Part shown: piece by piece, positions 553 through 52,291 of the stretch
Layout: the number at the start of each line of letters is the position of its first letter
Position numbering within the stretch: the first letter of the stretch is position 1
DNA from: Octopus sinensis
Taxonomy: Eukaryota
Reading direction: 5' to 3'
Assembly: GCF_006345805.1 (NCBI RefSeq)
Contig: NC_043014.1
Location: 31,248,001-31,312,000, forward strand
DNA: 64,000 nt
The notes under the pieces: model-generated
Seen by the model: the letters and a program-made list of their open reading frames with translations, nothing else
Told to the model about the DNA's origin: nothing
Database searches by the model: none
Made by a program: the position numbers and the translations under genes

Positions 553-553
553 A

Positions 554-13261: not shown

Positions 13262-13515
13262 CTAGTCTAGAATCACTTCAGATAACATAGGTTCATCATG
13301 AAGACCTAACTCCATATTTCTGAAGGCTGTCTCGCGAATTTCTTTCCTCATGGCAACTGTGTTTGTGGCACAGTGTGGTGTAATGATAACATTTGGGAAG
13401 TTGTAAAGCTTGTGATCTACTGGCAAGGGTTCGGGTGTAGTGACGTCCAGGGCAGCTCCTGCAATCCTTCTTGATTCCAGTGCATCAACAAGAGCACTTT
13501 GGTCAATGATATCTC
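13262..13515 (-). CDS. 2-hydroxyacid dehydrogenase copy A, coding exon 4 (DVTTPEP, TPH, stop)
   Basis: 254 nt, TTTAG acceptor, TAG stop; spliced product is 326 aa with an intact Arg/Glu/His triad. Confidence 0.93.
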
Positions 13516-14535
13516 CTAAATTGAAAGAATAAAAAGGAAAGAGGCAGTGATAGAGCGACAGAAATAGAAAAATCAATGATAGATGGGTGTCCACTATGCT
13601 CAAGATCGTCAAGGCTCAGGTCTCCACAGTGAAATCATTTAAACTATTTTCGAGCTGACCACTCACTGGTCATTTCCTCACCAAATGTTTTGTTGATATC
13701 GTGAGCAGTTTCAGCTGCTTTACATCCTTTTTAGAAGTTGAATAGCAAAATTGCTCAAATATCAGGCTTTGATGGTTCCATTTCAGATGATTGGAACAAC
13801 GGTAAAAAAATACCAATGTTAACTTATTGATGCATTTGGGCAAGTCTAAATGTGTATTATCAGACAATTGCAAAAATCCAGTACAAATTCTTTTTACTCA
13901 ACCTGGTATATATGTATATATGCACATATATGTACGCACACATAAGGTTTGTTCAAAAAGAAACTGAACATTTAAAACAGACTAACTGGTGCAATGTACT
14001 TGTTCCTGCAGTTCTGCATATGAATAACTTTGAGCTTCAGTGTAATAGTCACTTTGTGTTGTTGGAGAGAAGGATAGGTTGATAGATGTGGTAGAAGTAG
14101 GAATTAAGTTCTGACAGGGTGCAACTACTCATATGGAATGATTCAGTGAATAAGAGAGAGGGTATTGAAGAGATGAGAGGATCATGTGGATCTAATACTA
14201 TGCCTAGTTACAAAAGTAGTAAGGGACAGTAAAACATTAGTATTAAGGCAGGTCAATATTTCTCATTAGGTCATTTCATTCTGTGTTCTCTAATTCAGTG
14301 TTAAAGAAACCAAGAAATGAAATCCTTGAGACTTCCTATAACTATATACCAGTAATTAACCCTTTAACTGCCTGTCCAATATCATTAAATTCTTCACAAT
14401 CCTACCATTCCTTCTCTTCAAAGATCGTCACCTCATATCTTCAAGTTCCAATATCAAATCAGACGTTTTATTACTTGTCTATTTTCGTTTGTCATACATC
14501 CATAACTATTAGTGACAAGAAATTAAAGTACCTAC

Positions 14536-14714
14536 CTCTGGCAATATTGATTAACGTTGCTGTCTTTTTCATTGCCTCCAGTTCCTTGTGACTAATAAAA
14601 TGATACGTTTGTGGTGTCAAAGTACAGGTAATCACAACATAATCACACAATGGTAACATGTCCATCAAGCTACTATAAAACTGCGCATCCACTTTTGCTT
14701 CTTCTTCTTCGGAC
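14536..14714 (-). CDS. 2-hydroxyacid dehydrogenase copy A, coding exon 3 (catalytic Arg, INIARG)
   Basis: 179 nt, TTTTACAG acceptor, GTAGGT donor. Confidence 0.93.
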
Positions 14715-16351
14715 CTGTAAAAGAAACTGAGTCTCTGGAATGTGTGTTTGAAGTATAATATTTTGTTCTTATCATTTTGCATCTAATTTTGATATTATAA
14801 TTGATGATGGATTTACTGCTGGAATAAGAGTGGTGTTTGCAGTTAGGAGCACTTTCCAGTGCAAAGACTCAGGTAACATTCAGATATGGAACATGTGTTG
14901 TCAAGTAGGCAGACAGTTCAATCAAAGATACAATTCTTGCATAAGCACATACTTCAATAATGTGAAACAATGCGACCAAGAGATCCTGTGTTGTTGTTGT
15001 TGTTAATCAACAAGACGGGTAAGGGTGATTAGGTGATGGTCTAGGGCTTAGGGACAGGAGACCCCAGACCTTGGAAAAAAAAAACTTTGGTCGTCGTCTT
15101 GTAGTCGAAGGCTCTTCGTTGACGTCCGACACCACTGGGAGGTGGCCCTCGAAGTCACTGGAAATGGAGATCTCCAGGTCCAAATTCTTGAACGGCAGAG
15201 AGCTTATGTGTAATTGCTTGGTCTGTTATGAACTACAGCCAAATTTCTGTCATTGTAGTATCTTAAAAAAGGAAAGGACAGATTAAATAATGTAGTTGTC
15301 AACACACTCTCTGAATAAGAGATGGACTATTTTAGTTCTGATGTCTACAGAACTAGAGCTGACCTGAGATTAAACAATTGCTTAATAACTGAGTAGTTTG
15401 AACTCAGTCATGTAGTCACTAGTTCATGATCTTAACCTTATATTCATCGAGGCTGATACAGAAGAAACTATTTTAATTTTATATTTGTTGTTTTTTATAA
15501 CAGACTGAAAGAATGACAAGCATCGTTTGGGTGTTTTTACCCATAAATTTCTATAATTGTTGTTGTTCAGCTTCCGGTTATTCTGAACACCCTCATGTTC
15601 AAACGTTTTCTGTCTGTGACCGTTCTGGCTAGTAAGGTCCAATATTGGACCGTGAAACCAAATAACTAACTCATCATCATCATCATCGTTTAACGTCCGC
15701 TTTCTATGCTAGCATGGGTTGGACGATTTTGACTGAGGGCTGGCAAACCAGATGGCTGCACCAGGCTCCAATCTTGATCTGGAACAGTTTCTACAGCTGG
15801 ATGCCCTTCCTAACGCCAACCGCTACTAGAGTGTAGTGGGTGCTTTTTACGTGCCACCGGTACGGGGGCCAGTCAGGTGGTACTGGCAACGACCTCGCTC
15901 GAATTTTTTTACACATACCACCGGCACAGGTGCCAGTAAGGCGACGCTGGTAACGATCATGCTCGAATGGTGTCTTTTACATGTCACCGGTACGGAAGGC
16001 AGTTAGCCGTTCTGGCAACAATAACGCTCGGATGTGGCTCTAAAACATTTAATTTGTGTTTTTATAAAGCAAAAAGTGCTAATGAACTAAAAAATAATTT
16101 AAAGCTTCCTACTTAGGAGAAAATCGCGATAAGCGCAAGTATATGTTATTAGTTCCTATGTATGTTTCCTTGTGGTCGGTTAGAGCTCAGCATTGGCTGC
16201 TCAAAGCGCAGTTAAATGCAATGGATCAAGAGGGAAACGCTTTATTGCATTTTACTACAGTACTTATAAAGTTTATAAGAATGAAAAAAGAAAACAAGCA
16301 ATTCGAATTTTATTTCTGTTAAATCATTTTGTTGGTAATCTTTTGAAAACT

Positions 16352-16572
16352 TATTTCTTTATTACCCACAAGGAGCTTAACAAACAAGGACAGACAAAGG
16401 GCTTAAGTCAATTACATCGATCCCAGTGCGTAACTGGTACTTAATTTATCGACCCCGAAAGGATGAAAGGCAAAGTCGACCTCGGCTGAATTTGAACTCA
16501 GAACGTAACGGCAGACGAAATACGGCTACGCATTTCGCTCGGCGTGTTAACGTTTCTGCCAGCTCGTCGCCT
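16352..16572 (-). mobile_element. Family-1 SINE with a perfect 16-bp TSD (TAATCTTTTGAAAACT)
   Basis: TSD at 16336-16351 and 16573-16588. Confidence 0.93.
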
Positions 16573-16991
16573 TAATCTTTTGAAAACTGTTTAAAAAGAG
16601 TTTACCTCAATCAAAATTTATTGTTGAAGGGAAGTAACTTCCAGCCAACTTCATCCAAGGGAAATAACTGTATTCTAATTTTTATTATTATTTTTTTCGA
16701 TTATATCCATACAGAAATACCTCTCAAACATTTTATTAGTATGTGTTCCTGGATGGCTAACATGTGCCTTCAACGCTCTAATCGTTTCAGATCAAAACAC
16801 TCGCCTTGCAAATACATCTCTGTAATTATCTTTTTCGTTTCGTGTTGATATTTGCAGGTCTAATAAAAATAAACCACTGCGCTTTTGCCATAAAAGAAGA
16901 AATTATTTTAAAAATCTGCCGGTCAAAGCGAAAAGATCCAAATGCTGCTAATATAGAACTCGCCGTTGCAAGTCCGAAACATCAGGTTAGC

Positions 16992-17225
16992 TGTATGTGA
17001 CCACACATGTCGAGCGGTCAGGCGAAGAGCTAATGTGCCAGAGAAAGCCAGGCAAGAAGAAGAAGAGAGAGAACTTCGCGGTACTTCGCTTTTTATATCA
17101 ACCGACGGTAATGCCACCTGTAGGCATTCCTACTGGAAGTTGCAACATCTTTCAGAACATGTTGTAGCGAAGTAGGAAATGTAACTCTCGTTCATTTCCC
17201 TTTCTCTCCAGTAGGGTTCTTTACA
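16992..17225 (-). mobile_element. Gypsy 3-prime LTR (TGTA...TACA), preceded by a polypurine tract
   Basis: AAAGGGGGAGTA PPT immediately before TGT, downstream of the integrase; TATA-like GATATAAAAAG inside. Confidence 0.65.
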
Positions 17226-17417
17226 GATACTCCCCCTTTCGACGACCAGTCGAAAAAGTTAACACTCTGTGGTGGAGGACTGGAAAGAAAGGCGAGCTAA
17301 GGTACAAGTGTTTGCTACTAAGCAGAAAATATAGCAACATAATTTCAAAGAATAAAATGAATGCACTTGCGAAGTGGGACAACAAGACAATTCAAAAGTT
17401 GATGCATGAAAAGAAGC

Positions 17418-18325
17418 TTAAATACACACAATCTTGCACAGTTTTTTTGGCCAGTGTACACGACGACAACTACGAGTCCTCGTGACGAGTGTTGATGAAG
17501 GGAAAGGTGTATGCGCTTTTGAAGGTGGTGATTGCATGGGTGCAGTACTTGTAGTTTGTTGCGGTTTGTATTGGAGGGGAATGTTTGGCTCTAGAGTGAG
17601 GGCCTCAGAGAAAGCGCGCTTCATTCTGTCGATAGACACTGTTTCTTTTCTACCATGAATGTCTATGGTGAGGAGTTTGTGTGTTTGTGCAAGGACACGA
17701 TAGGGCCCTATATATGGTTTTGTGAGAGGACCACTCACAGTTATCCCTAAGGAACACATGAGTCTAAGTAGCAATGTCTGCTATAACTGCAGCAAGAACA
17801 GTCTGATGTCAAGAAGACATCGGTGGAAGATCCGCGGAGTAAGTTTGCAGTCTATGTACCTAAGACGCAGGATCTTGAACTGATAAGTCCACAGATGCCA
17901 ACATCTGACCTGGTCGAGATAATGGTGAAGCGTAGAGAAGCTCAGCAGGGGAGTATCCTAAATCCTCTTTCACTGATGAGCGACAACCCAATAGAACAAC
18001 AGGCAGGTATTCGCTCCATCGATGAAGATCAGAATCGGCACGCAATGACGCCTTTAATTGACGGTGGAGCCGTTCCACCATGCCATTCGGGACTGGATGA
18101 TAACTAGTCGTCCGGATATGGCAAACTTCTAAGATGCTTGAAAGTTGTTGGAAAAGCTGGTATTCGAATTGCCTCCCGCATTCAGTAGCAATCTTTAATT
18201 GAACACCAAAACGTGAAATCCAACCTGATATGAGGGCATGCGTCACTGATATCGACTAGAGGGATGACTTCAGGCCAACGTGAAAAGCGGTCGATACATG
18301 TAAGTATGTAAGTGAATCCTCGACT
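17418..18325 (-). mobile_element. Gypsy integrase fragment (pseudogenic)
   Basis: TCIDRFSRWPE, GRQFE, TTSYHP.NGMVERLHR, GPY motif. Confidence 0.92.
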
Positions 18326-18489
18326 TCGTCCGTTAAACAGTACAGTGAACAAAATGAAAACATTGTCTGGATAATTCAGCTCTGATCGTCGATCCAATCA
18401 CGTTACGCGTAATACATTCACAAACAATAATCTGAATGTGCGCTGGAGCACATCCTCCTTCTATAAATGGATCTAACAAACCATCTATG

Positions 18490-18960
18490 AGGAGAGGGGT
18501 GAGCGAATTTCAAGAAGGCAAGTCATGATATCTTCCTACCGTTATTCATCAGTACAACATTAATATAATGGAGCACAAGTAACCAACGACGATCAGAGCT
18601 GAATTATCCAGACAATGAATAAACCATATTACTATCAGAATTCGTGATGTTTTTATTTCGTTCACTGTACTGTTTAACGGACGAATAGAGTCTCGCTGTT
18701 ATTTTTAAAGTTTGTTTCTTGCATTATACCCACGAGTGAACACGCAACATATATTATATAATGGTATACTAGATTCCATAGTTAAAGTCGGAGAAATTTT
18801 ATACAACGCCATTAAAACCCGAATGTCGCGATTTGTTGGAATGTTGCCTTCCCCAACTACAATTTATCAGCGGTACATTAAAAATATGCAAAACACTTCA
18901 GAAATTGGATCTTTACCTTTTGACCGGCAGATTTAGAAAATAATTTTTTTGTAACTAAAC
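18490..18960 (+). repeat. Unclassified interspersed repeat; second copy at about 23930-24260; related termini at about 16900-16950 and 63410-63470
   Basis: About 330 bp alignable by eye between the two loci. Confidence 0.65.
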
Positions 18961-19029
18961 ACTTTCAAACTTCGTATACTGGTAGAATGTGTCATATGAA
19001 ACATATTTTACTCTTAGCGTTTTTGCGAA

Positions 19030-19579
19030 GTTTATATTTACGAAGTTATTTCGTGTTAAAGTTGTCGTATTTTGATAATTTCAACCATTCAATGACGTGT
19101 ATTTAGCTGAATAAAATTACTGCTGTTGTTTGTCAACAACAACTTCCAGCAGTGTATATTTCGTTTGTCACTGTTATTTATGACATATTTCATCTCAGTT
19201 ACATTTGTATGAATAAACGAGTGTATCTGAAGCATGTTTACTTCATGGCACCATCACAATCGTTCGTGCATTTCTACTGCTTTTAGTTATTTTTCTCTGT
19301 TTTTCATCTACTAATTTCGGAAAGACTTTTTTGCCCCCCTCTCCAATTTCTTCATTTTTCATTTTTTTCCGTAACTCTAACACTAAAACATTAAAGCTAA
19401 AACCAGTACAAACGTACGCACGATGTCATAAATAACAGCGACAAACGAAATATACACCGCTGGAAGTTGTTGTTGACAAACAACAACAGTAATTTTATTC
19501 AGCTGAATACACGTCATTGATTGGTTGAAATTACCGAAATTCGACAACTTTAACACGAAATAACTTCGTAAATATAAAC
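19030..19579. repeat. Long inverted repeat with 157-bp arms (19030-19186 and 19423-19579); fold-back/MITE-like
   Basis: Arms are reverse-complementary with only scattered mismatches. Confidence 0.9.
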
Positions 19580-19589
19580 ATGCGTCGAT

Positions 19590-19925
19590 TAAGTTAGACT
19601 GGACACCTTGTTCAGATGAATGATTAGAGGATCCCTAAACAGATGCTGAGACTACGGTTCAAGGATTGTATAAAATCCTTGTTGAAGGCTTGTAATATAT
19701 GGAAAGTCAACAGGCAAAGCAATGCTTGTCATCGCCACCAGTGAAAGAAACTAGAAAAGGAAGGAATGAAAATTTTTGAAGAAACACACATCTTGAATGC
19801 TGAACTTAAGCAAACTGCTAGAAAACACACTACCAGTGGAGTGAATGGGTAAAGTTTCGTCTGCAGTGTCTGCAGACGTGTACGTCTATCAAGAGCTGGT
19901 CTCATTAGTCCCAAGCGGATCAGCA
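19590..19925 (+). mobile_element. RTE-clade LINE 3-prime ORF relic
   Basis: TGHLVQMND*RIPKQML...FKDCIK...CSVCRRVRLSRAGLIS. Confidence 0.7.
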
Positions 19926-20149
19926 AGTGTAAAGTACAATTTTGTTAGACTGTACATTTTCTTAGTGGTCAGTGACGGTCTTCCTGGGTCACGAGTGGAC
20001 AGCCACCGTATATAGTATATGTGATTGATTTTCCCATGCCATCCAAGTTTATCTTGTCTGAAAGATTTTAGAGGTCCTTTCATCAAGAAGTTATGTGGAG
20101 CAGAGAGGGCCATCTATAAGAGAGCCTTTACAAAACTATGCGATCTGCT

Positions 20150-20400
20150 AAAAAATGACAAATCTCACTTGAAATACCTCCTACCATCATAGGTCTGCTT
20201 GATCAGGAATTGGCTAGACTCCCACAGATAAAAGAATAACATTATGATGTACCTTGTATTACACTCAAACAATGCGTCCCAAAACTTTCTCTTGCTTTCA
20301 CCAAACTCTTTAATATCTCACTCTCATTTGCAGGCATGCTTCAGTGTTATCCATTCAAAGAAAGGGACCCTAAGGATCGGCCAGCTTTTGTTGTCTCATT
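20150..20400 (+). mobile_element. CR1/Jockey-like RT relic
   Basis: LKQCVPKLSLAFTKLFNISL. Confidence 0.5.
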
Positions 20401-20479
20401 GCTACCAATTCTAACATTTCTAAGATTGTAGAGACATCCGTTAACAATGACGTTGACCGTCATATTTAATCCCTCTCTC

Positions 20480-20700
20480 GTTTCTATCGCCCCTATAATA
20501 GCCCCTGATTTTCGGAGCTGGCTGGTCTCGTAGCCCCATCCACACTGCCCATCCCTGTACCATTTGTATCCCCACCTATTGTCACCTTTATTAAATCCCT
20601 TCTCTTTCCCTGCACTAACCAGGATTTCCACGTCTTCATCCACAGAATATTGGCTATCTGGAATCTCCTCTCCATTCATATCTTTCCCACAACAGTTTGA
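20480..20700. repeat. Intron-2 segment shared by all three paralogs (also about 38590-38830 and 59980-60180); predates the duplications
   Basis: CTGGTCTCGTAGCCCCATCCACACTGCCCA-like sequence at the same offset from exon 2 in each copy. Confidence 0.7.
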
Positions 20701-20874
20701 ACAGAACACAAACAGCATCTACCTAACCAGTCTTCGAGAGCCTACAAAGGTGAGTCATGGGCTCCTCTTGTTCCGCCACACTCAGAAAGTATAAAAAAAT
20801 CCATGCATTATCCTTCAATTCACTTATTTCACTTGTCATAATGTCCCATACACAAATATACTTGAAACACTCAC

Positions 20875-21049
20875 CTTTGCCTTCTTTGATGATACAACAC
20901 CTTCATTTCAAAAGCATGAGCTCTGATTGCCAGCTTGTAGCCAATGGTTCCCATTCCAATTATTCCAATCGAATTTCCTGTGATGTCATGTGCCAAAAGT
21001 TCTGGTGGATACAAACTTGTTTTCAATGTCTTCGGAAAATATTCGGCAC
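20875..21049 (-). CDS. 2-hydroxyacid dehydrogenase copy A, coding exon 2 (GxGxxG Rossmann fold)
   Basis: 175 nt, ATACAG acceptor, GTGAGT donor; GIIGMGTIG...VLYHQRRQ; phases 1/2 fit the neighbouring exons. Confidence 0.93.
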
Positions 21050-21097
21050 CTGTATAAAGATATAAATACGTAGATACTTATATATAAGATGTTCTAG

Positions 21098-21530
21098 ATA
21101 TGGAAGCAAGGTCTAGAATCAAAGGGCCTTTGAGTTAACCTAGCAAAAACCAAAGTCTTAGTAAGTAGGAAGGTAGACAAATCAAAAATCTCTTCAGGTA
21201 GATGACCCTGCTCAATCTGTAGAAAAGGTGTAGGTAAAAACTGCATAAGATGCACCCAGTGTAAGCTTTGGACGCTTAAAAGATGCAGCAACACCAGGAT
21301 GGTTAACAGGGAAACTGTATAGGTACAACAATCACTGAAAATGTGCAGAAAATAGACTCCATCAACTGCCAGAGGTAGTAGATATCTAGGTGACCAAGTT
21401 TGTAGTGGAGGTGGATGCTCGGAGATCGTAGTTGTGAGAATAAGATTAGGCGTAAGCTTGAAAGAAATGAAGCCAGTATGCTTCGCTGGATGTGTAACGT
21501 CAGTGTGCATGTTCAACAGAGGGCGTAGGA
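21098..21530 (+). mobile_element. RTE-clade LINE fragment with Cys-rich insert in the RT thumb
   Basis: WKQGLESKGL*VNLAKTKVL...PCSICRKGVG..CIRCTQCKLW...YLGDQV...EASMLRWMC. Confidence 0.85.
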
Positions 21531-21619
21531 GGAATCAAATGTGGTGTACAGGCATGGCCCGAATATCTCCGTCCTGTAGTTCAGGATGCTCCCGGCACGA
21601 CCGAGTCTTTTAGGATTCT

Positions 21620-21900
21620 CGTGTGTTCGGCAATGCATAACTTGCAACCTTTTCGTCCCCTTAATGTAGGGGTCTGGGTTCTCGTGGGATGCACTGGGTA
21701 TTCTATTAAACAGCGTCTTTCCAATCATTTGTCCTCCTTCACAGTCCCGGAAAGGAGATACGTGACATCGCTGGCCAAACATATCTTGCAAATAAGAGAC
21801 GAAGGGATACCATATTCGATTGCATGGAAAATACTCGAGAACCCAGGTTCCTACATCAAAGGGACGAAACGTTGTGCAAAAAATCCGAGTTTTTTTCTTA
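21620..21900 (+). mobile_element. Penelope-like GIY-YIG endonuclease fragment
   Basis: VGCTGYSIKQRLSNH...TSLAKHI...IAWKILE..GSY.KGTKRC. Confidence 0.85.
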
Positions 21901-22134
21901 GTGAAAATCGTGCGAGTGAATGAATCAAATAATACCAAATAATTACATGAAGGTACATTTTGATGAGACTTAAAGATGGGAAAATGATTGTGTATGCGCG
22001 TGCGCGCGTGTCTGCGTGTATGTGTGTGTATGCGCACGTGAGAGAGAGTGGGGAGAAGAAATAATGATGTAAGTCTGTGAGAATAAGGAAAGAGAAAATT
22101 AAGTTAAAAGGATAAAAATAAATAAATGCGCCTA

Positions 22135-22350
22135 TTTTTTAAAGCCTAGCCAGGTTCATGGGCCCGGTTTCCCAGTTTCAATGGTGTGTGTGTTCCCCAG
22201 CTGGACTCCTTTATGCCAGCTGAGTGGACTGGAGCAATGTGAAATGAAGTGTTTTGCTCAAGAACACAACGCGTTGCACGGTCCAGGAATCGAAACCACA
22301 ATCTTACGATCATGATGCTGACACCCTAATCACTAAACCACGCGCCTCCA
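22135..22350 (-). mobile_element. Family-3 (Meta/V-like) tRNA-derived SINE; other copies at about 10880-11045, 27124-27345, 58168-58510, 61120-61400 and 61650-61790
   Basis: GGAGGCGCGTGGTTTAGTG head, GTTCTTGAGCAAAACACT...CACTCAGCTG core. Confidence 0.8.
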
Positions 22351-22513
22351 CAAGCTAAAAAAGGATAAGAATAACTAAAAGACAAAATAGAACTCAAGAA
22401 ATTATAGAGCAAGACTTTGAACAAAAAAAAAAAAAGAAATTCCTGAAAGGAGGTGAAATAAATCCCACCGTTTTTTATGTGTTCTAAAAAGTAAAAGGAA
22501 TAATTTTACTTAC

Positions 22514-22886
22514 ACTGAACTATTTTCCTTGACATTGCCAATAATAGTGCCATACCAAAATTTGCGGCAGCTCTTCCATCTTGGATGCTATGACCAATCC
22601 TAATGCCACGCGATTTAGCCCATTTAATGTCAACGTCATCAAAACCTATACCGAAAAAGCAAATAATTCTAAGATTTACTAACTTCTCAAGTAATCCACG
22701 GAATTTTTGGTTATTATTTAGGCCCGATTGTACATACAAGCCAACAACCTTCTCACAGAGTGAAGGATTTTGTTCCAGTTCTTTGAGAGTCACCATATTT
22801 TGTTTACGGAATACAACATTGGAGAAAAATCTCTTAAAATCAGGCATATCATAAAAATGTTCACTAAAATTCACTACCAAAGCCAT
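22514..22886 (-). CDS. D-2-hydroxyacid dehydrogenase (GRHPR/2KGR-like) copy A, coding exon 1
   Basis: ATG at 22886 (the longer ORF start is a TTG). 124 codons + 1 nt, GTAAGT donor; GIGFDDVD..KSRGIRIGHS motif. Confidence 0.92.
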
Positions 22887-25935: not shown

Positions 25936-26298
25936 ATGGCTTTGGTAGTGAATTTTTGTGGACATCTTTATGAAAAATTGCCTGATTTTAAGAGCTTCTT
26001 CTTCAATGTTGTATTCCGTAAACAAAATGTGGTGACTCTCAAAGAACTGGAACAAAATCCTTCATTCTGTGAGAAGGTTGTTGGCTTGTATGTACATTCG
26101 GACCTAAACAGTAACCATGAATTCCTTGAATTACTTGAGAAGTTAGTAAACCTTAAAATTATTTCCTTCTTTGGCATTGGTTTCGATAGTGTTGACACTG
26201 AATGGGCATTAGGATTGGTCATAGCATCCAAGATGGAGGAGCTGCTGCAAATTTTGGTATGGCACTCTTATTGGCAATGTCAAGGAAAATAATTCAGT
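25936..26298 (+). pseudogene. Inverted orphan exon 1 of the dehydrogenase family (copy B)
   Basis: Closely similar to copy D exon 1. A 13-nt deletion (TAAATCACGTGGC, GGC microhomology) at 26207/26208 shifts the frame. Acceptor, ATG and GTAAGT donor are retained; no exons 2-4 on the plus strand. Confidence 0.88.
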
Positions 26299-26380
26299 GT
26301 AAGTAAATGATTCCTTTTAATTTTTAGAACACATAAAAAACAATGGGATTTATTTCACCTCCTTTCAATAATTCTTAATA

Positions 26381-32961: not shown

Positions 32962-33215
32962 CTAATCTAGCTTCACCTCAGACAACATTGGCTCTCCACG
33001 GAGACCTAGCTCCATGTTTTTGAAAGCTGTCTCGCGTAATTCTTTCATCGCCTCAGTTGTGTTTGTGGCACAGTGTGGTGTAATGATAACATTTGGGAAG
33101 TTGTAAAGCTTGTGGTCTACTGGCAAGGGTTCGGGTGTAGTGACGTCCAGGGCGGCTCCTGCAATCCTTCCTGATTCCAATGCATCAACAAGAGCACTTT
33201 GGTCAATGATGTCTC
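32962..33215 (-). CDS. 2-hydroxyacid dehydrogenase copy C, coding exon 4
   Basis: 254 nt, TTTAG acceptor, TAG stop; 327-aa product. Confidence 0.92.
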
Positions 33216-34319
33216 CTAAATAAAAAAATAAAAAACAAAGAAAAAAAAAACAAAGTTAGTAAAAGAAATATATGACCCTCCGCAAAATCCCAGATCGTAT
33301 TTAATTGGCTTTGCGGGAGCCACTCTTTTATCGAAGGCGTATCTTGTTGTGAATTGCTCGAAATACGGATTAGAAAAACAGTCGACAACTGACGAAGAGT
33401 CGTTCTTTGTGTTTTTTGTTTTGTTTTCCATTTGTTTGTTTCGTTGTTCGCAAAAAAAGTTCATATTCCATGTCCTCGTACTTCGTATATTTTGTTGCTT
33501 ACGTTTTGTGATGTCCTGTGCCCACATACGCATATATATATACGTATACATGTAAGTATGTACGTATATATATGTATGTATATATGCATATATATACATA
33601 TTATTTATATTATTATATATACACACACTCTGTTTTCTTTATTGTAAAAAATATTCCTTGAATATTTATTGTGCGACTCTTACTCTATCTCTTTCTATCT
33701 CTACTCTTACTCTTATCTCTCTTTGTCCTTGCTTGCTTCCATTGTACCTTTCTTTTCGTTCTCTCCCCATCTCTCTCTGCCTCTCTCTTTTTCCTTAGTC
33801 CCTCCGACCTCTCCAACACTTCCTTTCTCCAACCACGTGATTGGTGTCCAGCCAAAGCGGTGCTGTTTTTTTCGGCCTGCCTCTGATCATACTAGTCATG
33901 CTTGTCTGGGCTCCTGCTATGTCCCCTACGACTTTCTCCATTTCATCTTTGCGCCATCCCACTACCTCTGTTCGGTAGATGAAAGGCTCATGTTGTATTT
34001 GTGGTATATGTATTATTATTCTTTTTCTTCTGTTGTATAACCGAAAGGCTTCGTTCTGTTATATCTGCATAATTCTTTTTCTGTTGTATTCATATTTTTT
34101 GTTGTATATGTACTATCATTTTAGTTTGTCGTATTTGTGTCTGTCCTTATATACACTCGCCAATGGGCTTATTAAAAAATAAATAGAGTGAGAAAAGAAG
34201 TATTAATAGCAGAAGGTAAAACATTCGCCACAAAAGCAGTATTATTTACCAGAAGGTAAAATATTTGCTACTTAAAAGTGCAATATTGTCTGCCGCTAAT
34301 GATAGCTATGATGAGATTT

Positions 34320-35911
34320 TATGCACCAAAACCATTTGAGAGATACCTTACTAGCATATATTTCCACAGTCTCTCAGCCACATGCAGCTGCAGGTATGCT
34401 GACTTCAAATCGACGATTGTGGAGGCCTCCATCATTTGCCACCACTCCTTCAAGGTTTCGCTGCAAATGTCTGTAGGTTCGTCGCCTGTATGGCACAATA
34501 TATGGTTGTTCAGCTCTCGGAAATCCAATTCTGGTCTGACTTTATGCTTCGTCGGCTGCACCACTGCCATCAGTGGTAGCACTCTATTCTCCACTTCCTC
34601 CTTCCAAGAGATCATAATGCCTTCCTTGATCCACCGTTCCACCTCTCCCTCGAACTCACTTCTGGCATCCCCTTTCAGGGTATGCTGATAGCAGCCTACT
34701 GCGTTTTCAATGCTGGAGGATCTCCCTTCCAGTACCATTCCACTGTCCACTGCCAGCCGTCGAACACTGCCCGAAAATCCTTGTAAGCAATGGTGTGTGC
34801 AGCATATCTTTCTTCGCAACTTTCACCACTCTCCTGTCGCGGACTCACGGTGCATAATGCCTCTGCATCACTGAACACTACACTGGCTTCATTGACCGTG
34901 ACACCTCCCAAACGGACAATGGCGTCCAACTCCATCACCACATCAACTCTGTCCACCACGCGGTCGATCGTGATCGCGCACAACCTCAATCTCGTTTCGC
35001 GTACCACCATCTCCACATCACTACTCCCTCTGCATTCAACTTCCGTACCGTCAACAGCTCTTACACGACTCACTCCACTCCATTTTTCCACCACCTCCGG
35101 AGTCATTAGGGTTGTTGAGCAGCCTGTGTCCACGAGGGCTCGTGAGACCTTTCTGTTCACCACGACATCTATTACTGACAACGACTGTATATGCGCCTCT
35201 ATTCTTTCTTCGGGACGACTACCTATTTCTTTACTACCCACAAGGGGCTAAACACAGAGAGGACAAACATGGACAAACGGTTTAAGTCGATTACATCGAT
35301 CCCAGTGCGTAACTGGTACTTAATTTATCGACCCCGAAAGGATGAAAGGCCAAGTCGGCCTTGGCGGAATTTGAACTCAGAACCTAACGGCAGACGAAAT
35401 ACGGCTACGCATTTCGCCCGGCGTGCTAACGTTTCTGCCAGCTCACCGCCTAGTCTCCTCTAGACCGTTTTCCTAGATGCTTTCAATAGCGATGTGGCGT
35501 GTTTGTCTGCATCGATAGCAAATTACTCCAGGCCTGGGTTCCTTGCAGTTTCTCACCATGTGCGAACCCTGACACCGAAAACACTGCCTTTTGAAGGGTC
35601 ACACACGTTCCATGTTCGATCCCTCTCCACCGCTTTGTTTGAACCCTTCTCGTTGTTGCAGTCGCTGCTAAAGGTGTCGTCCTGCAACACGAGACGATGC
35701 CTCTGGCCTTAGATATTACCTCTTCCATCGCCATGGAGTGAATATTCGGCAGCTTTTGCAGTTCGACCGAACCGTGGTCAGGAAATCCTGTCACAAATGC
35801 TAATTTAACTGTTTGTTCCAACGCGTCATTCCTGTATCCGACAAGTCTGGCCAATCTCCTGATTTCGTTGGCAAATACATCGATCGGTTCACCCGTTCAC
35901 TTCGCTTTCAT
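34320..35911 (-). mobile_element. Gypsy gag C-terminal half, protease and RT fragment, interrupted by a SINE at 35223-35450
   Basis: GEPIDVFANEIRRLA, VKLAFVTGFP, ALVDTGCS, LPLMAVVQ..K.KVRP.LDFRELN, VDLKSAYLQ. Confidence 0.92.
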
Positions 35912-36117
35912 ATTTTACTGTTCAATTTATACATTCCCAACCAGCTCGACCATTAGTGAATACAAATACCATTTATGTTTTCAAAATAACTTACCCAATC
36001 ATATTAAAACAGGCTTATTCATCAAATTAGATTATATCAAATCATATATCAGACGTACCAAAGGTATTCGAGTACTATTTTTTCCGCCTTGTTTTGCATT
36101 TATGTGCATACTCGTGT

Positions 36118-36122
36118 ATATA

Positions 36123-36208
<86 letters not shown>
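36118..36208. repeat. (TA)n microsatellite
   Basis: Direct reading. Confidence 0.95.
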
Positions 36209-36211
<3 letters not shown>

Positions 36212-36700
36212 ACCTGTTGAGGCAAGTGAAATCGAAATCAAAATCAAATTCGATGACATCCGTGCTAGTGGAGCGCTAAGAGTACCATATGAGCATGATC
36301 GTTGCCAGAGCAACAAACTGGTCCCTGTGCCGGTGGCACGTAAAAAGCACCATTTGAGCGTGATTGTTACCTGTGTCGCCTTACTGGCACTTGTGCTGGT
36401 GTTATGTGCAAAAATATTCGAGCGAGATCGTTGCCAGTGCCGCTGGGCTGGCTCCTGTGCAGGTGGCACATAAAAAGCACCATTTAAGCGTGGCTGTTGC
36501 CAGTACTGCCTGACTGGCCCTCGTGTGGGTGGCACGTAAAAGCACCCACAACACTCTTGGAGTGGTTGGCATTGTAGAAACTCTGCCAGATCAGATTGGA
36601 GTCTGGTGCAGCCATCTGGTTTGCCAGACCTCAGTCAAATCGTCCAACCAATGTTAGCATGGAAAGCGGACGTTAAACGATGATGGTGATGATGATGATG

Positions 36701-36732
<32 letters not shown>

Positions 36733-37775
36733 CAACAATAGTATATGACAAGTACTACAACTCCATTGCTGTCAAATCTTAAAAAGTAAGTAAATTTCCA
36801 TTCAACTATGGAGTCCAACACATACAAAAGACAGGCAAAGAATATGGGATGATCACAACTGGTCGGTCGACTCTTCCAGGTCTACTCAACCAGCGCTGAC
36901 TTGGAGATAAAACAATAACTACAGATTAAATACATTACCTACAATAATACCAACAACAATTATTATTAACAAAACTACTATGCCGCCACCACCAACGCCG
37001 CCGCCGCCGCCACCACCACCACTTCTACTACTCTTTACTCTCTCTTTTACTCTTTTACTTGTTTCAGTTATTTGACTGTAGTCATGCTGGAGCACCGCCT
37101 TTAGTCGAGCTATTTCAACACCAGGACTTATTCTTTGTAAGCCTAGTACTTATTCTATCGGTCTCTTTTGCCGATCCGCTAAGTTACGGTGATGTAAACA
37201 CACCTGCATTGTTTGTCAAGCGATGTTGGGGGGACAAACACAGACACACAAACATATACACACACACACACACATATATATATACATATATATGACGGGC
37301 TTCTTTCAGTTTCCGTCTACCAAATCCACTCACAAGGCTTTGGTTGGCCCAAGGCTATAGTAGAAGACACTTGCCCAAGGTGTCATGCAGTGGGACTGAA
37401 CCCGGAACCATGTAGTTGGTAAACAAGCTACTTACCACACAGCCACTCCTATGCCTAACTACTACTAATAATAATGATGATCATCATACTCATTAGTATT
37501 AAGGCAGGCCAATGTCACTCATTAGGTCATTTCATTTTGTGTTCTTTAATTCAATGTTAAAGAAACCAAGACATAAAAAACTTTCTATAACTATATACCA
37601 GTAATTAACTGCCAGTCCAATACCATTAAATTCTTCACCACTCACCATTCCTTCTTTTTAAAGATCATCACTTCGTATCTTCAAGTTCCAATGTCAAATC
37701 AGACATTTTATTACTTGTCTATTTTTGTTTGTCATACATCCATAACTATTAGTGACAGGAAATTAAAGTACCTAC

Positions 37776-37954
37776 CTCTGGCAATATTGATTAAAGTTGC
37801 AGTCTTCTTCATTACGTCCAGTTCCTTGTGATCAATCAAATGATATGTTTGTGGTGTCAAAGCACAGGTAATCACAACATAGTCACACAATGGTAACATG
37901 TCCATCAAGCTACTATAAAACTGAGCGTCTACTTTTGCTTCCTCTTCTTCGGAC
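37776..37954 (-). CDS. 2-hydroxyacid dehydrogenase copy C, coding exon 3
   Basis: 179 nt, open by hand translation (SEEEEAKVDAQFY...INIAR); absent from the ORF track; canonical splice sites. Confidence 0.92.
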
Positions 37955-38986
37955 CTGTTGAAGAAATTGATTAATTCATTAATTGTGTATTAACTAGTTT
38001 CTGGAATGTGTTTGAAGAATAGTATTTTGTTCTTACAGTTTTGCATCTATTTTTAGTATTGTAAAGGATGAATTTACAGCTGGAATAAAAGTGGTGTTTG
38101 CAGTAGAAATACTTTGTACTGCAAAGACTCAGGTAAGAAGCTGGTGTGGAACTTCTGTTGTCATGCAGGTAGACAGTTCAATCAAGGATAGAATTATGAC
38201 ATAAGCACACACCTCAATAATGTGAGACAATAAAACCAAGATATCTTGTGTGTTATTGCTTGCTTTGTTAGAAATTGCAGCCAAATTTATTTCATATCAC
38301 AATGCACTATCAAAGAAAGAAATGGATAGATGAAATAGTGTAGTCTTCAATAAACTGTTCGAATAATACAGGGGTTGCTTTTGTTCTGAAGTCTGCAGGG
38401 CCACGGCTGATCTGAGACTAAGCAACAACTGTTTAATAACTGTATAGTTTGAACTTAAAACTATGTGGTTAGTAGTTCTAGTGTAGCATCTCATTCAATA
38501 TTACTCTGTTAATTAACAAGACATCAGTTACATGACTAATTAAGTCATCTTTTGGGAAACTGATCAAGAGATCTTGTTATTGCTCACAAACCTCTGGTCT
38601 TCTCTCTCTCTCTTTTCTATTGTTGCTATAATGGACCCTGTATTTTGAAGCTTGTTGGTCTCCTAACCCCATCTACACTTCCCACTACCATACCATTTGT
38701 CCCCCCAACCTCTCATCACCCCTATTGGACAAACCATGATGCCTAATTCTTCATCTAAGAGTATTGGCTCTCTGGAATCTCCTCCCTCATATCTTTCCAA
38801 AGTTTCTGACCTGCAATAGTTTAAACAGAACACAAACAGCATCTATCTAACCAGTCTTCGAAAGCCTACAAGTGTTATGGGTTTGTTCCTCTTCTTCAAA
38901 ACTCAGAAAGTACTAAAAATCCATGCATCTATCCTTCAATTTACTTGTCTTAATGTCCTATACACAAATCTAATTAAAGCACTCAC

Positions 38987-39161
38987 CTTTGCCTCCTTTG
39001 ATGATACAACACCTTCATTTCAAAAGCATGAGCTCTGATTGCCAGCTTGTAGCCAATGGTTCCCATTCCAATTATTCCAATCGAATTTCCTGTGACGTCA
39101 TGTGCCAGAAGTTCTGGTGGATACAAACTTGTTTTCAATGTCTTTGGAAAATATTCAGCAC
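38987..39161 (-). CDS. 2-hydroxyacid dehydrogenase copy C, coding exon 2
   Basis: 175 nt, CTTCAG acceptor, GTGAGT donor, GMGTIG motif. Confidence 0.93.
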
Positions 39162-39189
39162 CTGAAGATATATAATAATAATATAAAAG

Positions 39190-39646
39190 ATGGGCTACAG
39201 CAAATATTCTGCTCAATACCACAGATTTGCTTGTCACTTGTTTGACCGTAACCAGTTGAGCATGTCCCTTAGTGGCTGACGATATGTGCATCTCTGATCA
39301 TGAGCAGAAGTAGCGGGGGAGCATCATAGCCATGTGTTGAGAGGGATTCTTTGGGGTTTGAATAATTCACCTTTGGAAACATGGGTGGTTCTTTCAACAT
39401 CCTTAAAAAACCTTTTTCAGGGACCTTTTGAGCAGGATGGGCTACTCAATCTGAAGAAAATTCTAACTGAGCCCCACCTGTAAGGTCATGTGCTGTTTAT
39501 CTTGATATGAGATCACCATGTCGCGCACATATGGTTGATGCATGTGCCTAGTGTACCCTTATCAGACGGGTAGTCATGATGGGTATATTGGGCTTCGTAT
39601 ATTTTACCCCAGTGTCACTTTGATGGCATGAACTGCTCTCTCACTC

Positions 39647-39701
<55 letters not shown>

Positions 39702-39703
39702 TT
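39190..39703 (+). mobile_element. Unclassified retroposon 3-prime end with (TAA)n tail
   Basis: GC-richer block ending CTCTCTCACTC(AAT)n. Confidence 0.5.
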
Positions 39704-40210
39704 ATAAAAGATAAGACGATAAAAGCTAATAAACCAGATATTATTATAAAAGATTAGACAAAAAAGGTGTATTTATTAATTGACATGAGTATTCTTTGCG
39801 ATCACAATATAGCGGCGAAAAAATTTGACAAGGTCAGTAAATATAAAGACTTACTAATAGAAATTGGAAACATGTGGCATCTCAACGCGACTACAGTACC
39901 AGTGATTGTAGGATCTCTTGGAATGATAAAAAAAAAAGGAACTGAAGCCAATTTGAAAATGATACCAGGTTTACCATCCCTACAGGAAGTGCAAAAAATC
40001 GTGTTAACTGGAACGGTTCATGTACTGAGAAGAGCATTATCGCCGTGAAAACAATATCCATTCATGAATTTATTTATTCATTAATTTTTTAAATACATAT
40101 TTTATCTGTGAATTGCGTGTGTAATCTGGGAATGCATACAATGAGCTTCTCCGCCCTAAGTGTACGGAAAACACTCGGCGAGAAACGGAAGAAAATTTGA
40201 AGAAAGTAAA
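39704..40210 (+). mobile_element. 5-prime-truncated R4/Dong-like element: restriction-like endonuclease domain plus 3-prime UTR
   Basis: NKPDIIIKD...LIDMS...K.SKYKDL.IEI..MW...VPVIVGSLG...QKIVLTGT.HVLRRAL; (TAA)n on both sides. Confidence 0.88.
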
Positions 40211-40231
40211 ATAATAATAATAATAATAATG

Positions 40232-40295
<64 letters not shown>

Positions 40296-40716
40296 GATAA
40301 GTAAAGCAGCTGTTTAGCAATGTATGACCAAAAAGGAAAACTATAATTGTTATTAAATATGTCAGAAGGTGTTAGAACACTGACAATGCTAGAAATAAGA
40401 GTTAAAGTGCTCTGATGCTGCAATCAACGCACATAATTGTATACATGCATACTGACAGCAACCGTAAACAGCTGAAAGTGACAGTCTTAATATTCGTCGA
40501 TGGTTTGGGCTTTAAGACCAAAGCACTCATCAGCAGGGTCGGCACAACTCACTAGTTTCCGGACAAGATCGCCAGCAGTATATATGTCTACAACATAGAA
40601 ATCTATGGATGATTTAGCGAATCGCTATTGTGTATGCAAACAATTAAATTAGACAATGTATCACCGAAAAGGAAAACTATAATTAGCACTAAATATGACA
40701 GAGGGTGTTAGAACAT

Positions 40717-40920
40717 TGTTATGTACGACCAGTAATTCCTGGTTCAAAGAAACTAATTTTCAGTCATAGTCTAAAACAGCAATACGTCATATAGTGTTAT
40801 CCACAATATTCTCTATTGAACGTATGTTATTCAAAATGGCCACTCTCTCTCTGAGCATCAAATGCGCATGCCCTTTATATCAAGGGATGTCACTCAAATC
40901 TTAGCACAATTTGCCTAACA
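40717..40920 (-). mobile_element. Gypsy 3-prime LTR (TGTTA...TAACA)
   Basis: PPT AGGTGGGAGTGAA immediately upstream; follows the pol end RIRKAPERLDL*. Confidence 0.7.
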
Positions 40921-40947
40921 TTCACTCCCACCTAAAAAAAGAAAATA

Positions 40948-42062: not shown

Positions 42063-42289
42063 TGCGCCATCACATAATTTTATCATTTTTAATTTTGCTC
42101 GTCGCTTTATAACTTGACATCTGCATTTTATCCAAGCACCCGAAGGACCCAACCCTCAGAAATATACATGAGTACGTCCTCATAAATGAAACATTCCCTG
42201 TACTAAATAGGAAATATATGTAGCAGGTAATCATGCCCCATACCCACAGTTTATATTTATATACAGGTAGAATAGCTAGTGGGCTGTTA

Positions 42290-42299
42290 TGTAGATGTA

Positions 42300-42330
<31 letters not shown>

Positions 42331-43006: not shown

Positions 43007-43039
<33 letters not shown>

Positions 43040-43689: not shown

Positions 43690-43752
<63 letters not shown>

Positions 43753-52255: not shown

Positions 52256-52291
<36 letters not shown>

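What the first reader, a model, noticed from the sequence alone, without database searches (positions are those of the whole stretch)
13320..13375. Paralog-specific switch just after the catalytic His (human GRHPR Ser296/Arg302 equivalents)
Seen: A = HCATNTVAMRKEIRE, C (about 33020-33075) = HCATNTTEAMKELRE, D (about 52000-52055) = HCASNTKEVAYELCD, while the preceding 49 residues of exon 4 differ at only 1-2 sites. Known: human GRHPR reads H293-I-G-S296-A-T-H-R-T-R302, with Ser296 and Arg302 at the active site. Only copy A keeps Arg at His+9; C has Met and D has Ala. Inference: A is the most likely to retain glyoxylate/hydroxypyruvate reductase activity, and C and D may accept other, more hydrophobic substrates.
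Basis: partly seen in the sequence, partly recalled or inferred. Interest (0 to 1): 0.7.

Follow-up and report, generated by a model that had tools for sequence, protein, structure and literature searches.

The report
Octopus GRHPR-like paralogs: specificity-helix divergence
Three neighbouring octopus genes for GRHPR-like 2-oxoacid reductases share a nearly identical cofactor-binding core but differ sharply from six residues after the catalytic histidine, at a known substrate-specificity hot spot; this is real and probably functional, but an expected kind of divergence for this enzyme family.

Summary
Three intact four-exon genes (A, C, D) lie on the minus strand of an Octopus sinensis window and read HCATNTVAMRKEIRE, HCATNTTEAMKELRE and HCASNTKEVAYELCD after the catalytic His. 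The 47 residues before it differ at 1-2 sites. His+3 and His+9 align without gaps to human GRHPR Ser296 and Arg302.

This segment is the known GHRB specificity hot spot (Gly-Ser and Arg-X-X-Met motifs). The His+9 states R, M and A are kept in the O. bimaculoides relatives, and A keeps the ancestral AGG codon.

The sharp contrast is largely a mosaic history. The cofactor-domain exons were homogenised between paralogs within each species. Exon 1 and the block from His+6 to the stop escaped, and together they form the substrate-binding domain. The breakpoint is at His+6, where helix alpha5 starts.

No copy has Gly-Ser or the Trp141 equivalent. A is the least GRHPR-like overall. The cluster groups with "2-ketogluconate reductase/GhrB-like" proteins, and a canonical GRHPR peptide from O. 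vulgaris is not encoded here. "A retains GRHPR activity" is therefore not supported, and the substrates remain untested.

The parts
13262..22886 (-). Gene A (326 aa). Exons 22514-22886, 20875-21049, 14536-14714 and 13262-13515. GhrB-like D-2-hydroxyacid dehydrogenase; 100% identical to the shared part of an O. sinensis RefSeq isoform (P0022).
   Evidence: Intact ORF with GT-AG introns. Pfam PF02826 at 4e-56 and PF00389. Identity to P0022.
32962..44623 (-). Gene C (327 aa). Exons 44248-44623, 38987-39161, 37776-37954 and 32962-33215. Identical to P0020 (O. sinensis).
51941..63006 (-). Gene D (327 aa). Exons 62631-63006, 60340-60514, 54610-54788 and 51941-52194. Identical to P0019 (O. sinensis).
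13331..13375 (-). Copy A, catalytic His290 to His+14: HCATNTVAMRKEIRE. His+3 Thr is at 13366-13364, His+9 Arg (AGG) at 13348-13346 and His+12 Ile at 13339-13337.
33031..33075 (-). Copy C, His291 to His+14: HCATNTTEAMKELRE. His+9 Met (ATG) is at 33048-33046, one G>T step from AGG.
52010..52054 (-). Copy D, His291 to His+14: HCASNTKEVAYELCD. His+3 Ser is at 52045-52043 and His+9 Ala (GCA) at 52027-52025.
13262..13357 (-). Copy A, old unhomogenised 3' block running from His+6 to the stop (helix alpha5 and the C-terminus, part of the substrate-binding domain). The equivalent blocks are C 32962-33057 and D 51941-52036.
   Evidence: Breakpoint at column 158. Over the 111 nt after the His codon, paralogs differ at 18-28 sites and orthologs at 5-11. 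The helix spans 296-314 in the model.
13358..13515 (-). Copy A, exon 4 up to His+5. This is the last part of the homogenised NAD(P)-domain core, which also includes exons 2 and 3.
   Evidence: Within O. sinensis the paralogs differ at 5-6 of 143 nt, against 7-9 of 143 between orthologs. Species-fixed sites. dS values.
25936..26315 (+). Copy B: an inverted exon-1-only pseudogene fragment with a frameshift. It is the positional counterpart of the inverted O. bimaculoides copy P0024.

Best explanation
The finding lies at the start of helix alpha5 in three tandem paralogs of a GhrB-like, probably NADPH-dependent, D-2-hydroxyacid dehydrogenase in Octopus sinensis. The helix begins right after the loop that carries the catalytic His.

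Shown here. The array (D, C, an inverted remnant B, then A) predates the O. sinensis / O. bimaculoides split. Exons 2, 3 and exon 4 up to His+5 encode the Rossmann cofactor domain. They have been homogenised between paralogs within each species, so paralogs are no more diverged there than orthologs. Exon 1 and the last 96 nt (His+6 to stop) kept their old, paralog-specific sequences. Together these two parts make up the substrate-binding domain. Inside the old 3' block, amino-acid replacements pile up in His+6..+14, while the rest of the block changes mainly at synonymous sites.

Inferred. Gene conversion limited to the exons is the homogenising mechanism. Its edge at His+5/+6 is kept there either by selection against converting the specificity helix or by lack of homology. 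The paralog-specific residues at His+3 (T/T/S), His+9 (R/M/A), His+10 (K/K/Y) and His+12 (I/L/L), together with residue 78 next to the substrate-carboxylate-binding Ile-Gly (F/L/I), give the three enzymes different 2-oxoacid preferences. A keeps the ancestral Arg. C lost it through a single AGG>ATG change. D carries Ala-Tyr. None of them is the canonical GRHPR.
For: Gene models and the family. The AF2 model has pLDDT 89.9 and its top Foldseek hits are 2h1s/2gcg at TM 0.80-0.83.

Orthology of the array.

Mosaic history. Quartet site patterns for A and C in the two species are 0 concerted / 23 orthologous in exon 1 and 0/17 after the His, against 6/2 in the core (Fisher p = 2e-6). Across seven copies the core has 4 species-fixed and 5 near-fixed sites against 2 ortholog-shared sites. 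Exon 1 has 0 against 29 and the post-His block 0 against 17 (p = 6e-5). Core paralog dS is 0.11-0.17, about the same as ortholog dS of 0.12-0.17. Paralog dS from His+15 to the end is 0.6-1.6.

Breakpoint at the His+6 codon. Helix 296-314 begins at His+6. Pfam NAD-domain limits of 112-292.

Concentration of replacements. Paralog dN at His+6..+14 is 0.37-1.28, against 0.03-0.13 at His+15..end. N/S heterogeneity gives p = 0.03 to 0.23.

Conserved His+9 states and codons.

Role of the positions. The Arg-Ser-Trp water network and the tunnel lined by Arg297 and Met300 are described in PMC4749974. The Gly-Ser and Arg-X-X-Met motifs, and their replacement in a mandelate dehydrogenase, are described in PMC6303947. 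Vertebrate paralogs of the same clade differ in the same segment.
Against: The intron flanks of the core exons keep the orthology signal (for example 2/29, 1/23 and 2/48). Any conversion tracts would therefore have to stop at or near the exon edges, and the number of directly 'concerted' sites is small (4-9).

The O. bimaculoides assembly is gapped, and the post-His part of its D-like copy is missing.

Evidence for selection on His+6..+14 is weak. Omega is 0.4-2.3 on very few sites, and N/S heterogeneity is only marginally significant. The segment also changes between orthologs, with 2 to 3.5 replacements in 9 codons.

No distances to the substrate could be measured, because the tools do not expose model coordinates. 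No enzymology exists for any member of this animal clade.
Confidence: 0.65

Rival explanations
1. A is the copy that still works as a glyoxylate/hydroxypyruvate reductase because it keeps Arg at His+9. C and D have moved to more hydrophobic substrates.
For: A alone keeps Arg at His+9, with the same AGG codon as the distant homolog P0026. Arg302/Arg297 belongs to the specificity network (PMC4749974). Replacement of Arg-X-X-Met by Phe-His-Glu-Phe goes with mandelate activity in Rhodotorula graminis (PMC6303947).
Against: All three copies lack Gly at His+2 and lack any Trp141 equivalent. A has Ile rather than Met at His+12 and has lost the widely conserved Glu at His+7. A is the least similar of the three to human GRHPR and to the GhrB profile. 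All three score about 200 bits on the glyoxylate reductase model, whose cut-off is 455. The clade is 2-ketogluconate-reductase/GhrB-like. A separate canonical GRHPR peptide exists in O. vulgaris (PMC10142993).
Confidence: 0.2
2. Neutral drift. The first turns of helix alpha5 are simply weakly constrained in this clade. The residues differ between paralogs because this block escaped homogenisation and is old, with no change in substrate preference.
For: Omega in His+6..+14 is near 1 between paralogs and 0.4-0.5 between orthologs, and the segment keeps changing between species. Confidence in the model dips here, with pLDDT 83 for residues 291-300. N/S heterogeneity is only marginal. His+9 is variable across the wider clade, with T in 48 and R in 43 of 113 relatives.
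Against: The His+9 state is identical within each ortholog pair, and Ala is shared by D and the D-like copy B'. The varying positions are those shown structurally to line the substrate site (PMC4749974, PMC6303947). Residue 78, next to the carboxylate-binding Ile-Gly, co-varies by paralog type and is conserved for the A and C pairs (F/F and L/L; D has Ile where its ortholog has Leu). The flanking His+15..end is strongly constrained, with omega 0.04-0.13.
Confidence: 0.25
3. No gene conversion. The near-identity of the 49 preceding residues reflects only strong purifying selection on the cofactor domain.
For: The core is the conserved Rossmann domain. The intron flanks are not homogenised.
Against: Synonymous divergence of paralogs in the core (0.11-0.17) equals that of orthologs and is 4-10 times lower than in the adjacent post-His block. 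Four sites are fixed for one base in all O. sinensis copies and for another in all O. bimaculoides copies. These include the PELL/PELM and SEEEE/SKEEE replacements, which would need three or four parallel changes each.
Confidence: 0.07

Closest known systems
Human GRHPR (PDB 2GCG/2H1S) and archaeal glyoxylate/hydroxypyruvate reductases (2DBQ, 5AOV, 6BII)
   Same: These are the best sequence and fold matches. They share the Arg-Glu-His catalytic triad, the GxGxxG motif and the domain layout, and they align without gaps through the His..C-terminus region. Arg at His+9 is kept in copy A.
   Different: Identity is only 36-38%. At His+2/+3 the octopus copies have Ala-Thr or Ala-Ser instead of Gly-Ser. 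They have no Trp in the dimer loop. Arg-X-X-Met is incomplete in A (RKEI) and absent in C and D (MKEL, AYEL). NCBIfam equivalog cut-offs are not reached.
Vertebrate 'probable 2-ketogluconate reductase / glyoxylate-hydroxypyruvate reductase B-like' paralogs (birds, reptiles, coelacanth, amphioxus)
   Same: These are the nearest non-cephalopod relatives, at 41-44% identity and 211-238 bits. They also occur as several paralog types that differ in the same His+2..+12 segment: HIGSATKKTRRLMM, HLGIKTDKATYMIT and HIGTATVQATRMMT. D's Ala-Tyr at His+9/+10 resembles the Thr/Ala-Tyr type.
   Different: The vertebrate proteins keep Gly at His+2. As far as I could find, no member of this clade has been characterised biochemically. 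The octopus array is an independent, lineage-specific amplification; Argonauta has a single local copy.
GHRB-subfamily specificity determinants (2HADH knowledgebase, PMC6303947), including Rhodotorula graminis D-mandelate dehydrogenase
   Same: The same hot spot: the betaG-alpha5 loop and the start of alpha5. Replacing Arg-X-X-Met changes the substrate class accepted.
   Different: The octopus replacements (M-K-E-L and A-Y-E-L) are not the Phe-His-Glu-Phe of the mandelate enzyme, and their effect is unknown.
Concerted evolution of tandem paralogs in which specificity-determining segments escape conversion (general phenomenon; my own background knowledge, not tested here)
   Same: A homogenised core with old, orthology-preserving ends. 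The boundary coincides with a functional and domain boundary.
   Different: Here the homogenisation is confined to exons, and the flanking introns keep their orthology. Whether selection or lack of homology sets the boundary is unknown.

Membership tests
D-isomer-specific 2-hydroxyacid dehydrogenase (2HADH) superfamily | Catalytic and NAD(P)-binding domains (Pfam PF00389 and PF02826) above the curated cut-offs | tested here: met
   PF02826 scores 188-191 bits (cut-off 25.1) and PF00389 scores 44-47 bits (cut-off 24.6) in A, C and D.
D-isomer-specific 2-hydroxyacid dehydrogenase (2HADH) superfamily | Arg-Glu-His catalytic triad and the GxGxxG dinucleotide-binding motif | tested here: met
   R242, E271, H290 and G156/G158/G161 are invariant columns in a 30-sequence alignment. 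They align to human R245, E274 and H293.
D-isomer-specific 2-hydroxyacid dehydrogenase (2HADH) superfamily | Two-domain Rossmann fold | tested here: met
   The AF2 model has pLDDT 89.9 and pTM 0.83. Foldseek against 2h1s/2gcg gives TM 0.80-0.83 and E = 5e-31.
GHRB subfamily, GRHPR-type enzymes | Gly-Ser motif at His+2/+3 (Ser296 contacts the hydroxypyruvate hydroxyl) | tested here: not met
   A and C have Ala-Thr and D has Ala-Ser. Gly is at His+2 in 105 of 113 non-octopod relatives.
GHRB subfamily, GRHPR-type enzymes | Arg-X-X-Met motif at His+9..+12 | tested here: not met
   A has R-K-E-I (Arg only), C has M-K-E-L and D has A-Y-E-L.
GHRB subfamily, GRHPR-type enzymes | Trp from the partner subunit reaching into the active site (human Trp141) | tested here: not met
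   HMMER aligns Trp141 to Leu in the sequence TSLYPP. Each copy has a single Trp, at residue 89/90, far from that loop.
GHRB subfamily, GRHPR-type enzymes | Curated equivalog scores for glyoxylate reductase or GhrB (NCBIfam; prokaryote-trained models) | tested here: not met
   PRK13243 scores 200-201 bits against a cut-off of 455. GhrB scores 168 (A), 174 (C) and 187 (D) bits against a cut-off of 492.
GHRB subfamily, GRHPR-type enzymes | NAD(P)H-dependent reduction of glyoxylate and hydroxypyruvate | not testable with these tools
   This needs enzyme assays.
Ortholog of canonical animal GRHPR | Closer to GRHPR than to any other animal 2HADH clade, and the only such gene in the genome | tested here: not met
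   A scores 165 bits against human GRHPR, against 211-238 bits for the vertebrate 2-ketogluconate-reductase-like proteins. An O. vulgaris GRHPR peptide, NGNWGLWKPMWILGSSFANR (PMC10142993), is not encoded in the window. My attempt to fetch the full protein failed, so this rests on BLAST scores and one published peptide, not on a tree.
Interparalog gene conversion (concerted evolution) | Paralogs within a species as close as, or closer than, orthologs between species in the tract, including at synonymous sites | tested here: met
   Exon 2 shows 5-6 differences between paralogs within O. sinensis against 9-11 between orthologs. Exon 4 before the His shows 5-6 against 7-9. Core dS is 0.11-0.17 for paralogs and 0.14-0.17 for orthologs.
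Interparalog gene conversion (concerted evolution) | Species-specific states shared by all paralogs | tested here: met
   The core has 4 fixed and 5 near-fixed sites. Exon 1 and the post-His block have none.
Interparalog gene conversion (concerted evolution) | Tracts extend into the flanking non-coding DNA | tested here: not met
   Intron flanks show orthology patterns (2/29, 1/23, 1/30 and 2/48). The exception is the 3' flank of exon 3, where C and D are 7.6% apart. Homogenisation is therefore exon-limited.

The most novel reading that the evidence does not exclude
An Octopus-specific tandem array of GhrB-like reductases is kept as three enzymes with different 2-oxoacid specificities. Selection blocks gene conversion exactly at the boundary of the substrate-binding domain, which starts at His+6. 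Copy D has converged on the Ala/Thr-Tyr alpha5 motif of an uncharacterised sauropsid paralog. This would point to an unrecognised substrate class for this animal clade.
Probability: 0.3. Interest if true: 0.5.

Novelty: new member of a known kind. Interest (0 to 1): 0.3.

Why it matters
If the three copies do differ in substrate preference, they form a compact natural experiment. Their cofactor domains are almost identical, and their differences are confined to exon 1 and roughly nine residues of helix alpha5. That would make it easy to map specificity determinants in an animal 2HADH clade (2-ketogluconate-reductase/GhrB-like) that has no characterised member. It is also a clean example of a homogenisation boundary coinciding with a protein-domain boundary. 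It does not change what is known about GRHPR itself, and the hot spot is already described in the 2HADH literature.

Tried and rejected
(1) The first homolog search, using exon 4 alone, returned only short prokaryotic fragments.

(2) I considered an indel-shifted alignment of A against C (…AM-R against …AM…) in which A's Arg would be an insertion. I rejected it. The ungapped alignment matches the outgroup codons GAG-ACG-AGG. It gives single-step paths at His+7 (GAG>GAC>GCC>ACC across Argonauta, O. sinensis A and O. bimaculoides A) and AGG>ATG at His+9.

(3) I first read P0024 (O. bimaculoides) as the ortholog of D. Its position and orientation show that it corresponds to the inverted remnant B. 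A separate D-like copy lies upstream, but its post-His part falls in an assembly gap.

(4) I expected conversion tracts to extend into the introns. They do not, so I weakened the claim to exon-limited homogenisation.

(5) My last homolog search, with a chimeric probe carrying the O. vulgaris GRHPR peptide, did not retrieve the octopus canonical GRHPR.

(6) The primary structural paper on human GRHPR (Booth et al. 2006) is not held. I used its content as relayed by PMC4749974 and PMC6303947.

(8) I considered pseudogenisation of C or D and rejected it: both have intact ORFs and canonical splice sites, and overall omega is 0.28-0.47.

Full report
WHAT IS THERE

The window is eukaryotic (37.5% G+C). 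It carries three intact, tandem four-exon genes on the minus strand, each with canonical GT-AG introns:
- A: exons 22514-22886, 20875-21049, 14536-14714 and 13262-13515 (326 aa).
- C: exons 44248-44623, 38987-39161, 37776-37954 and 32962-33215 (327 aa).
- D: exons 62631-63006, 60340-60514, 54610-54788 and 51941-52194 (327 aa).

A fourth copy, B, is an inverted exon-1 fragment with a frameshift at 25936-26315 on the plus strand. C and D are identical to Octopus sinensis RefSeq proteins P0020 and P0019. A is identical to an O. sinensis isoform over the shared part. The window is therefore from O. sinensis.

THE OBSERVATION

His to His+14 occupies 13375-13331 in A, 33075-33031 in C and 52054-52010 in D. 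The 47 full codons of exon 4 up to the His differ at 1-2 residues between copies. His+1..+14 differs at 5-9 residues (p from 0.0017 to 5e-6). HMMER aligns A to human GRHPR without gaps in this region, so His290, Thr293 and Arg299 of A correspond to H293, S296 and R302.

FAMILY

All three copies have the 2-Hacid_dh_C and 2-Hacid_dh Pfam domains, the Arg-Glu-His triad and the GxGxxG motif. An AlphaFold2 model of A is confident (pLDDT 89.9, pTM 0.83). Its best structural matches are human GRHPR entries 2h1s and 2gcg (TM 0.80-0.83). The proteins are GHRB-type 2HADHs.

They are not canonical GRHPR:
- Identity to human GRHPR is 36-38%, with A the lowest. Identity to the vertebrate 'probable 2-ketogluconate reductase / GhrB-like' proteins is 41-44% with clearly higher scores.
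- NCBIfam equivalog cut-offs for glyoxylate reductase and GhrB are missed by a wide margin. A scores lowest on GhrB.
- An O. vulgaris ink-proteome study lists a GRHPR peptide, NGNWGLWKPMWILGSSFANR (PMC10142993). It carries the Trp-rich dimer loop of canonical GRHPR and is not encoded in the window.
- Each of A, C and D has a single Trp, at residue 89/90.

WHAT THE POSITIONS DO (LITERATURE)

In human and archaeal GRHPR, Arg302/Arg297, Ser296/Ser291 and Trp141'/Trp138' hold a conserved water that contacts the substrate hydroxymethyl group. Arg297 and Met300 (His+9 and His+12) line the substrate tunnel (PMC4749974, relaying Booth et al. 2006). The 2HADH knowledgebase paper names four GHRB specificity determinants: the Gly-Ser motif (His+2/+3), the Arg-X-X-Met motif (His+9..+12), Trp141 and Leu59. 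It also notes that a mandelate dehydrogenase has Phe-His-Glu-Phe in place of Arg-X-X-Met (PMC6303947).

In the octopus copies, His+2/+3 is Ala-Thr (A, C) or Ala-Ser (D). His+9..+12 is RKEI, MKEL and AYEL. Trp141 has no equivalent. Across 113 non-octopod relatives, His+2 is Gly in 105. His+3, +9, +10 and +12 vary by paralog type, for example HIGSATKKTRRLMM, HLGIKTDKATYMIT and HIGTATVQATRMMT in sauropsids. Divergence of paralogs in this segment is thus a recurring feature of the clade.

WHY THE CONTRAST IS SO SHARP

O. bimaculoides has the same array in the same order and orientation: a D-like copy, the C ortholog P0021, an inverted copy P0024, the A ortholog P0018, then an XRCC1-like gene. Argonauta hians has one compact copy and no array within 10 kb on either side.

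Nucleotide comparisons split the gene into two histories.
- The ends keep orthology. In the 111 nt after the His, orthologs differ at 5-11 sites and paralogs at 18-28. Exon 1 shows 24-31 differences between orthologs against 33-58 between paralogs.
- The core does not. In exon 2 and in exon 4 before the His, paralogs within a species (5-6 differences) are no further apart than orthologs (7-11). Exon 3 shows no orthology signal either.
- Quartet site patterns for A and C in the two species are 0 concerted / 23 orthologous in exon 1 and 0/17 after the His, but 6/2 in the core (p = 2e-6).
- Across seven copies the 512-nt core has 4 sites fixed for one base in all O. sinensis copies and another in all O. 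bimaculoides copies, plus 5 that are nearly so, against 2 ortholog-shared sites. Exon 1 has 0 against 29 and the post-His block 0 against 17 (p = 6e-5). At protein level these include PELL/PELM and SEEEE/SKEEE.
- Ortholog dS is 0.12-0.17 and core paralog dS is 0.11-0.17. Paralog dS from His+15 to the end is 0.6-1.6.
- Non-coding DNA downstream of A is about 90% identical between the species.

The core was therefore homogenised at about the time of, or after, speciation, while the ends are several times older. The breakpoint in exon 4 is the first base of the His+6 codon in all four paralog pairs tested. In the model, helix alpha5 (residues 296-314) starts at His+6, and the Pfam NAD-domain ends at 292. 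The homogenised part thus corresponds to the cofactor domain. The two escaped parts, exon 1 and the final helix, together form the substrate-binding domain.

One caveat applies. The intron flanks of the core exons mostly keep the orthology signal. The homogenisation is therefore exon-limited, and gene conversion as its mechanism is inferred, not shown.

WITHIN THE OLD 3' BLOCK

Amino-acid change is concentrated in His+6..+14, where paralog dN is 0.37-1.28 and omega is about 0.4-2.3. His+15 to the end is strongly constrained, with omega 0.04-0.13. The N/S contrast between the two sub-blocks is only marginal (p = 0.03-0.23). Between orthologs the nine codons still take 2 to 3.5 replacements. Positive selection is therefore not demonstrated.

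The His+9 state, however, is shared within each type. It is AGG (Arg) in A and its ortholog, ATG (Met) in C and its ortholog, and GCA (Ala) in D and the D-like copy B'. A distant homolog (P0026, from a transcript in SRR27666061) has GAG-ACG-AGG at His+7..+9, and Argonauta has ATA (Ile) at His+9. Arg is therefore ancestral and A retains it. C lost it by a single G>T change.

Residue 78, two positions before the invariant Gly81 that aligns with the carboxylate-binding Val83-Gly84 of GRHPR, also varies by paralog type. It is Phe in A and Leu in C, each matching its ortholog, and Ile in D, whose D-like ortholog has Leu.

VERDICT

The sequence observation and the residue mapping are correct. The idea that the paralogs differ in substrate preference through this segment is reasonable and gains support from cross-species conservation of the His+9 states.

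The specific claim that A retains GRHPR activity is not supported. All three copies lack two of the three network partners or motifs. A is overall the least GRHPR-like. The cluster belongs to a different, uncharacterised animal clade, and a canonical GRHPR appears to exist elsewhere in the genome.

The striking 'switch' is mainly the edge of an exon-limited homogenised core that coincides with the domain boundary. The divergence follows a pattern already described for this family, so this counts as a new member of a known kind. Interest is modest.

Noticed in passing
window 25936-26315 (+) and 28353-28424 (-): Copy B is an inverted exon-1-only remnant with a frameshift. It is closest to D (89% over 91 aa) and sits where O. 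bimaculoides has the inverted copy P0024. A second, very degenerate exon-1 scrap (SRSIGVRHSFKGGVTAANFHMALL) lies about 2 kb away on the other strand.
   Followed up: partly
L001 1-8257 and L002 10001-48685 (O. bimaculoides CM046620.1): The public gene models look faulty. The gene span given for P0021 (L002 10001-38685) covers two separate copies, a D-like one at 10001-22941 and the C ortholog at 29195-38682. P0024 (357 aa) contains a 60-residue foreign insert and lacks about 32 residues of exon 4. The assembly has many N gaps, one of which removes the post-His part of the D-like copy.
   Followed up: partly
window 23304-23372 (-): This is the alternative first exon of the RefSeq isoform X2 of gene A (MDEEDQLSAAKIEQRLREAYTE). 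It joins inside exon 1 near 22646 and would remove about 80 N-terminal residues of the substrate-binding domain. Such a product is unlikely to be a working enzyme.
   Followed up: no
window 14536-14714 (-), exon 3 of A: Exon 3 of O. sinensis A is an outlier. It differs at 12-15 sites from every other copy in both species, while the others differ by 3-9 among themselves. It carries A-specific replacements (TYHFISHKELEA against TYHLI[GD]HKELDV). This could reflect lineage-specific acceleration or escape from homogenisation.
   Followed up: no
window 1-13261: This stretch is colinear with the region downstream of the A ortholog in O. bimaculoides at about 90% identity. There it holds the 5' part of an XRCC1-like gene (XRCC1_N and BRCT domains). 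The same gene is therefore expected on the minus strand of roughly window 1-9500.
   Followed up: partly
window 181-555, 3264-3648, 16349-16575, 31234-31996, 35220-35451, 46497-46916: A short interspersed repeat family of about 190-400 bp occurs in both orientations at 80-94% identity within the introns and spacers of the array.
   Followed up: no
window 27723-28220, 43007-43126, 58021-58172; 19030-19186 with 19423-19579: Tetranucleotide microsatellite arrays are shared between spacers and introns. A 157-bp inverted repeat pair (95% identical) lies inside intron 2 of gene A.
   Followed up: no
L003 10001-13062 (Argonauta hians): Argonauta hians has the same four-exon gene packed into 3 kb, against 10-12 kb in Octopus. 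It has different neighbours (a TMEM170-like gene downstream) and no second copy within 10 kb. Its His+9 residue is Ile.
   Followed up: partly
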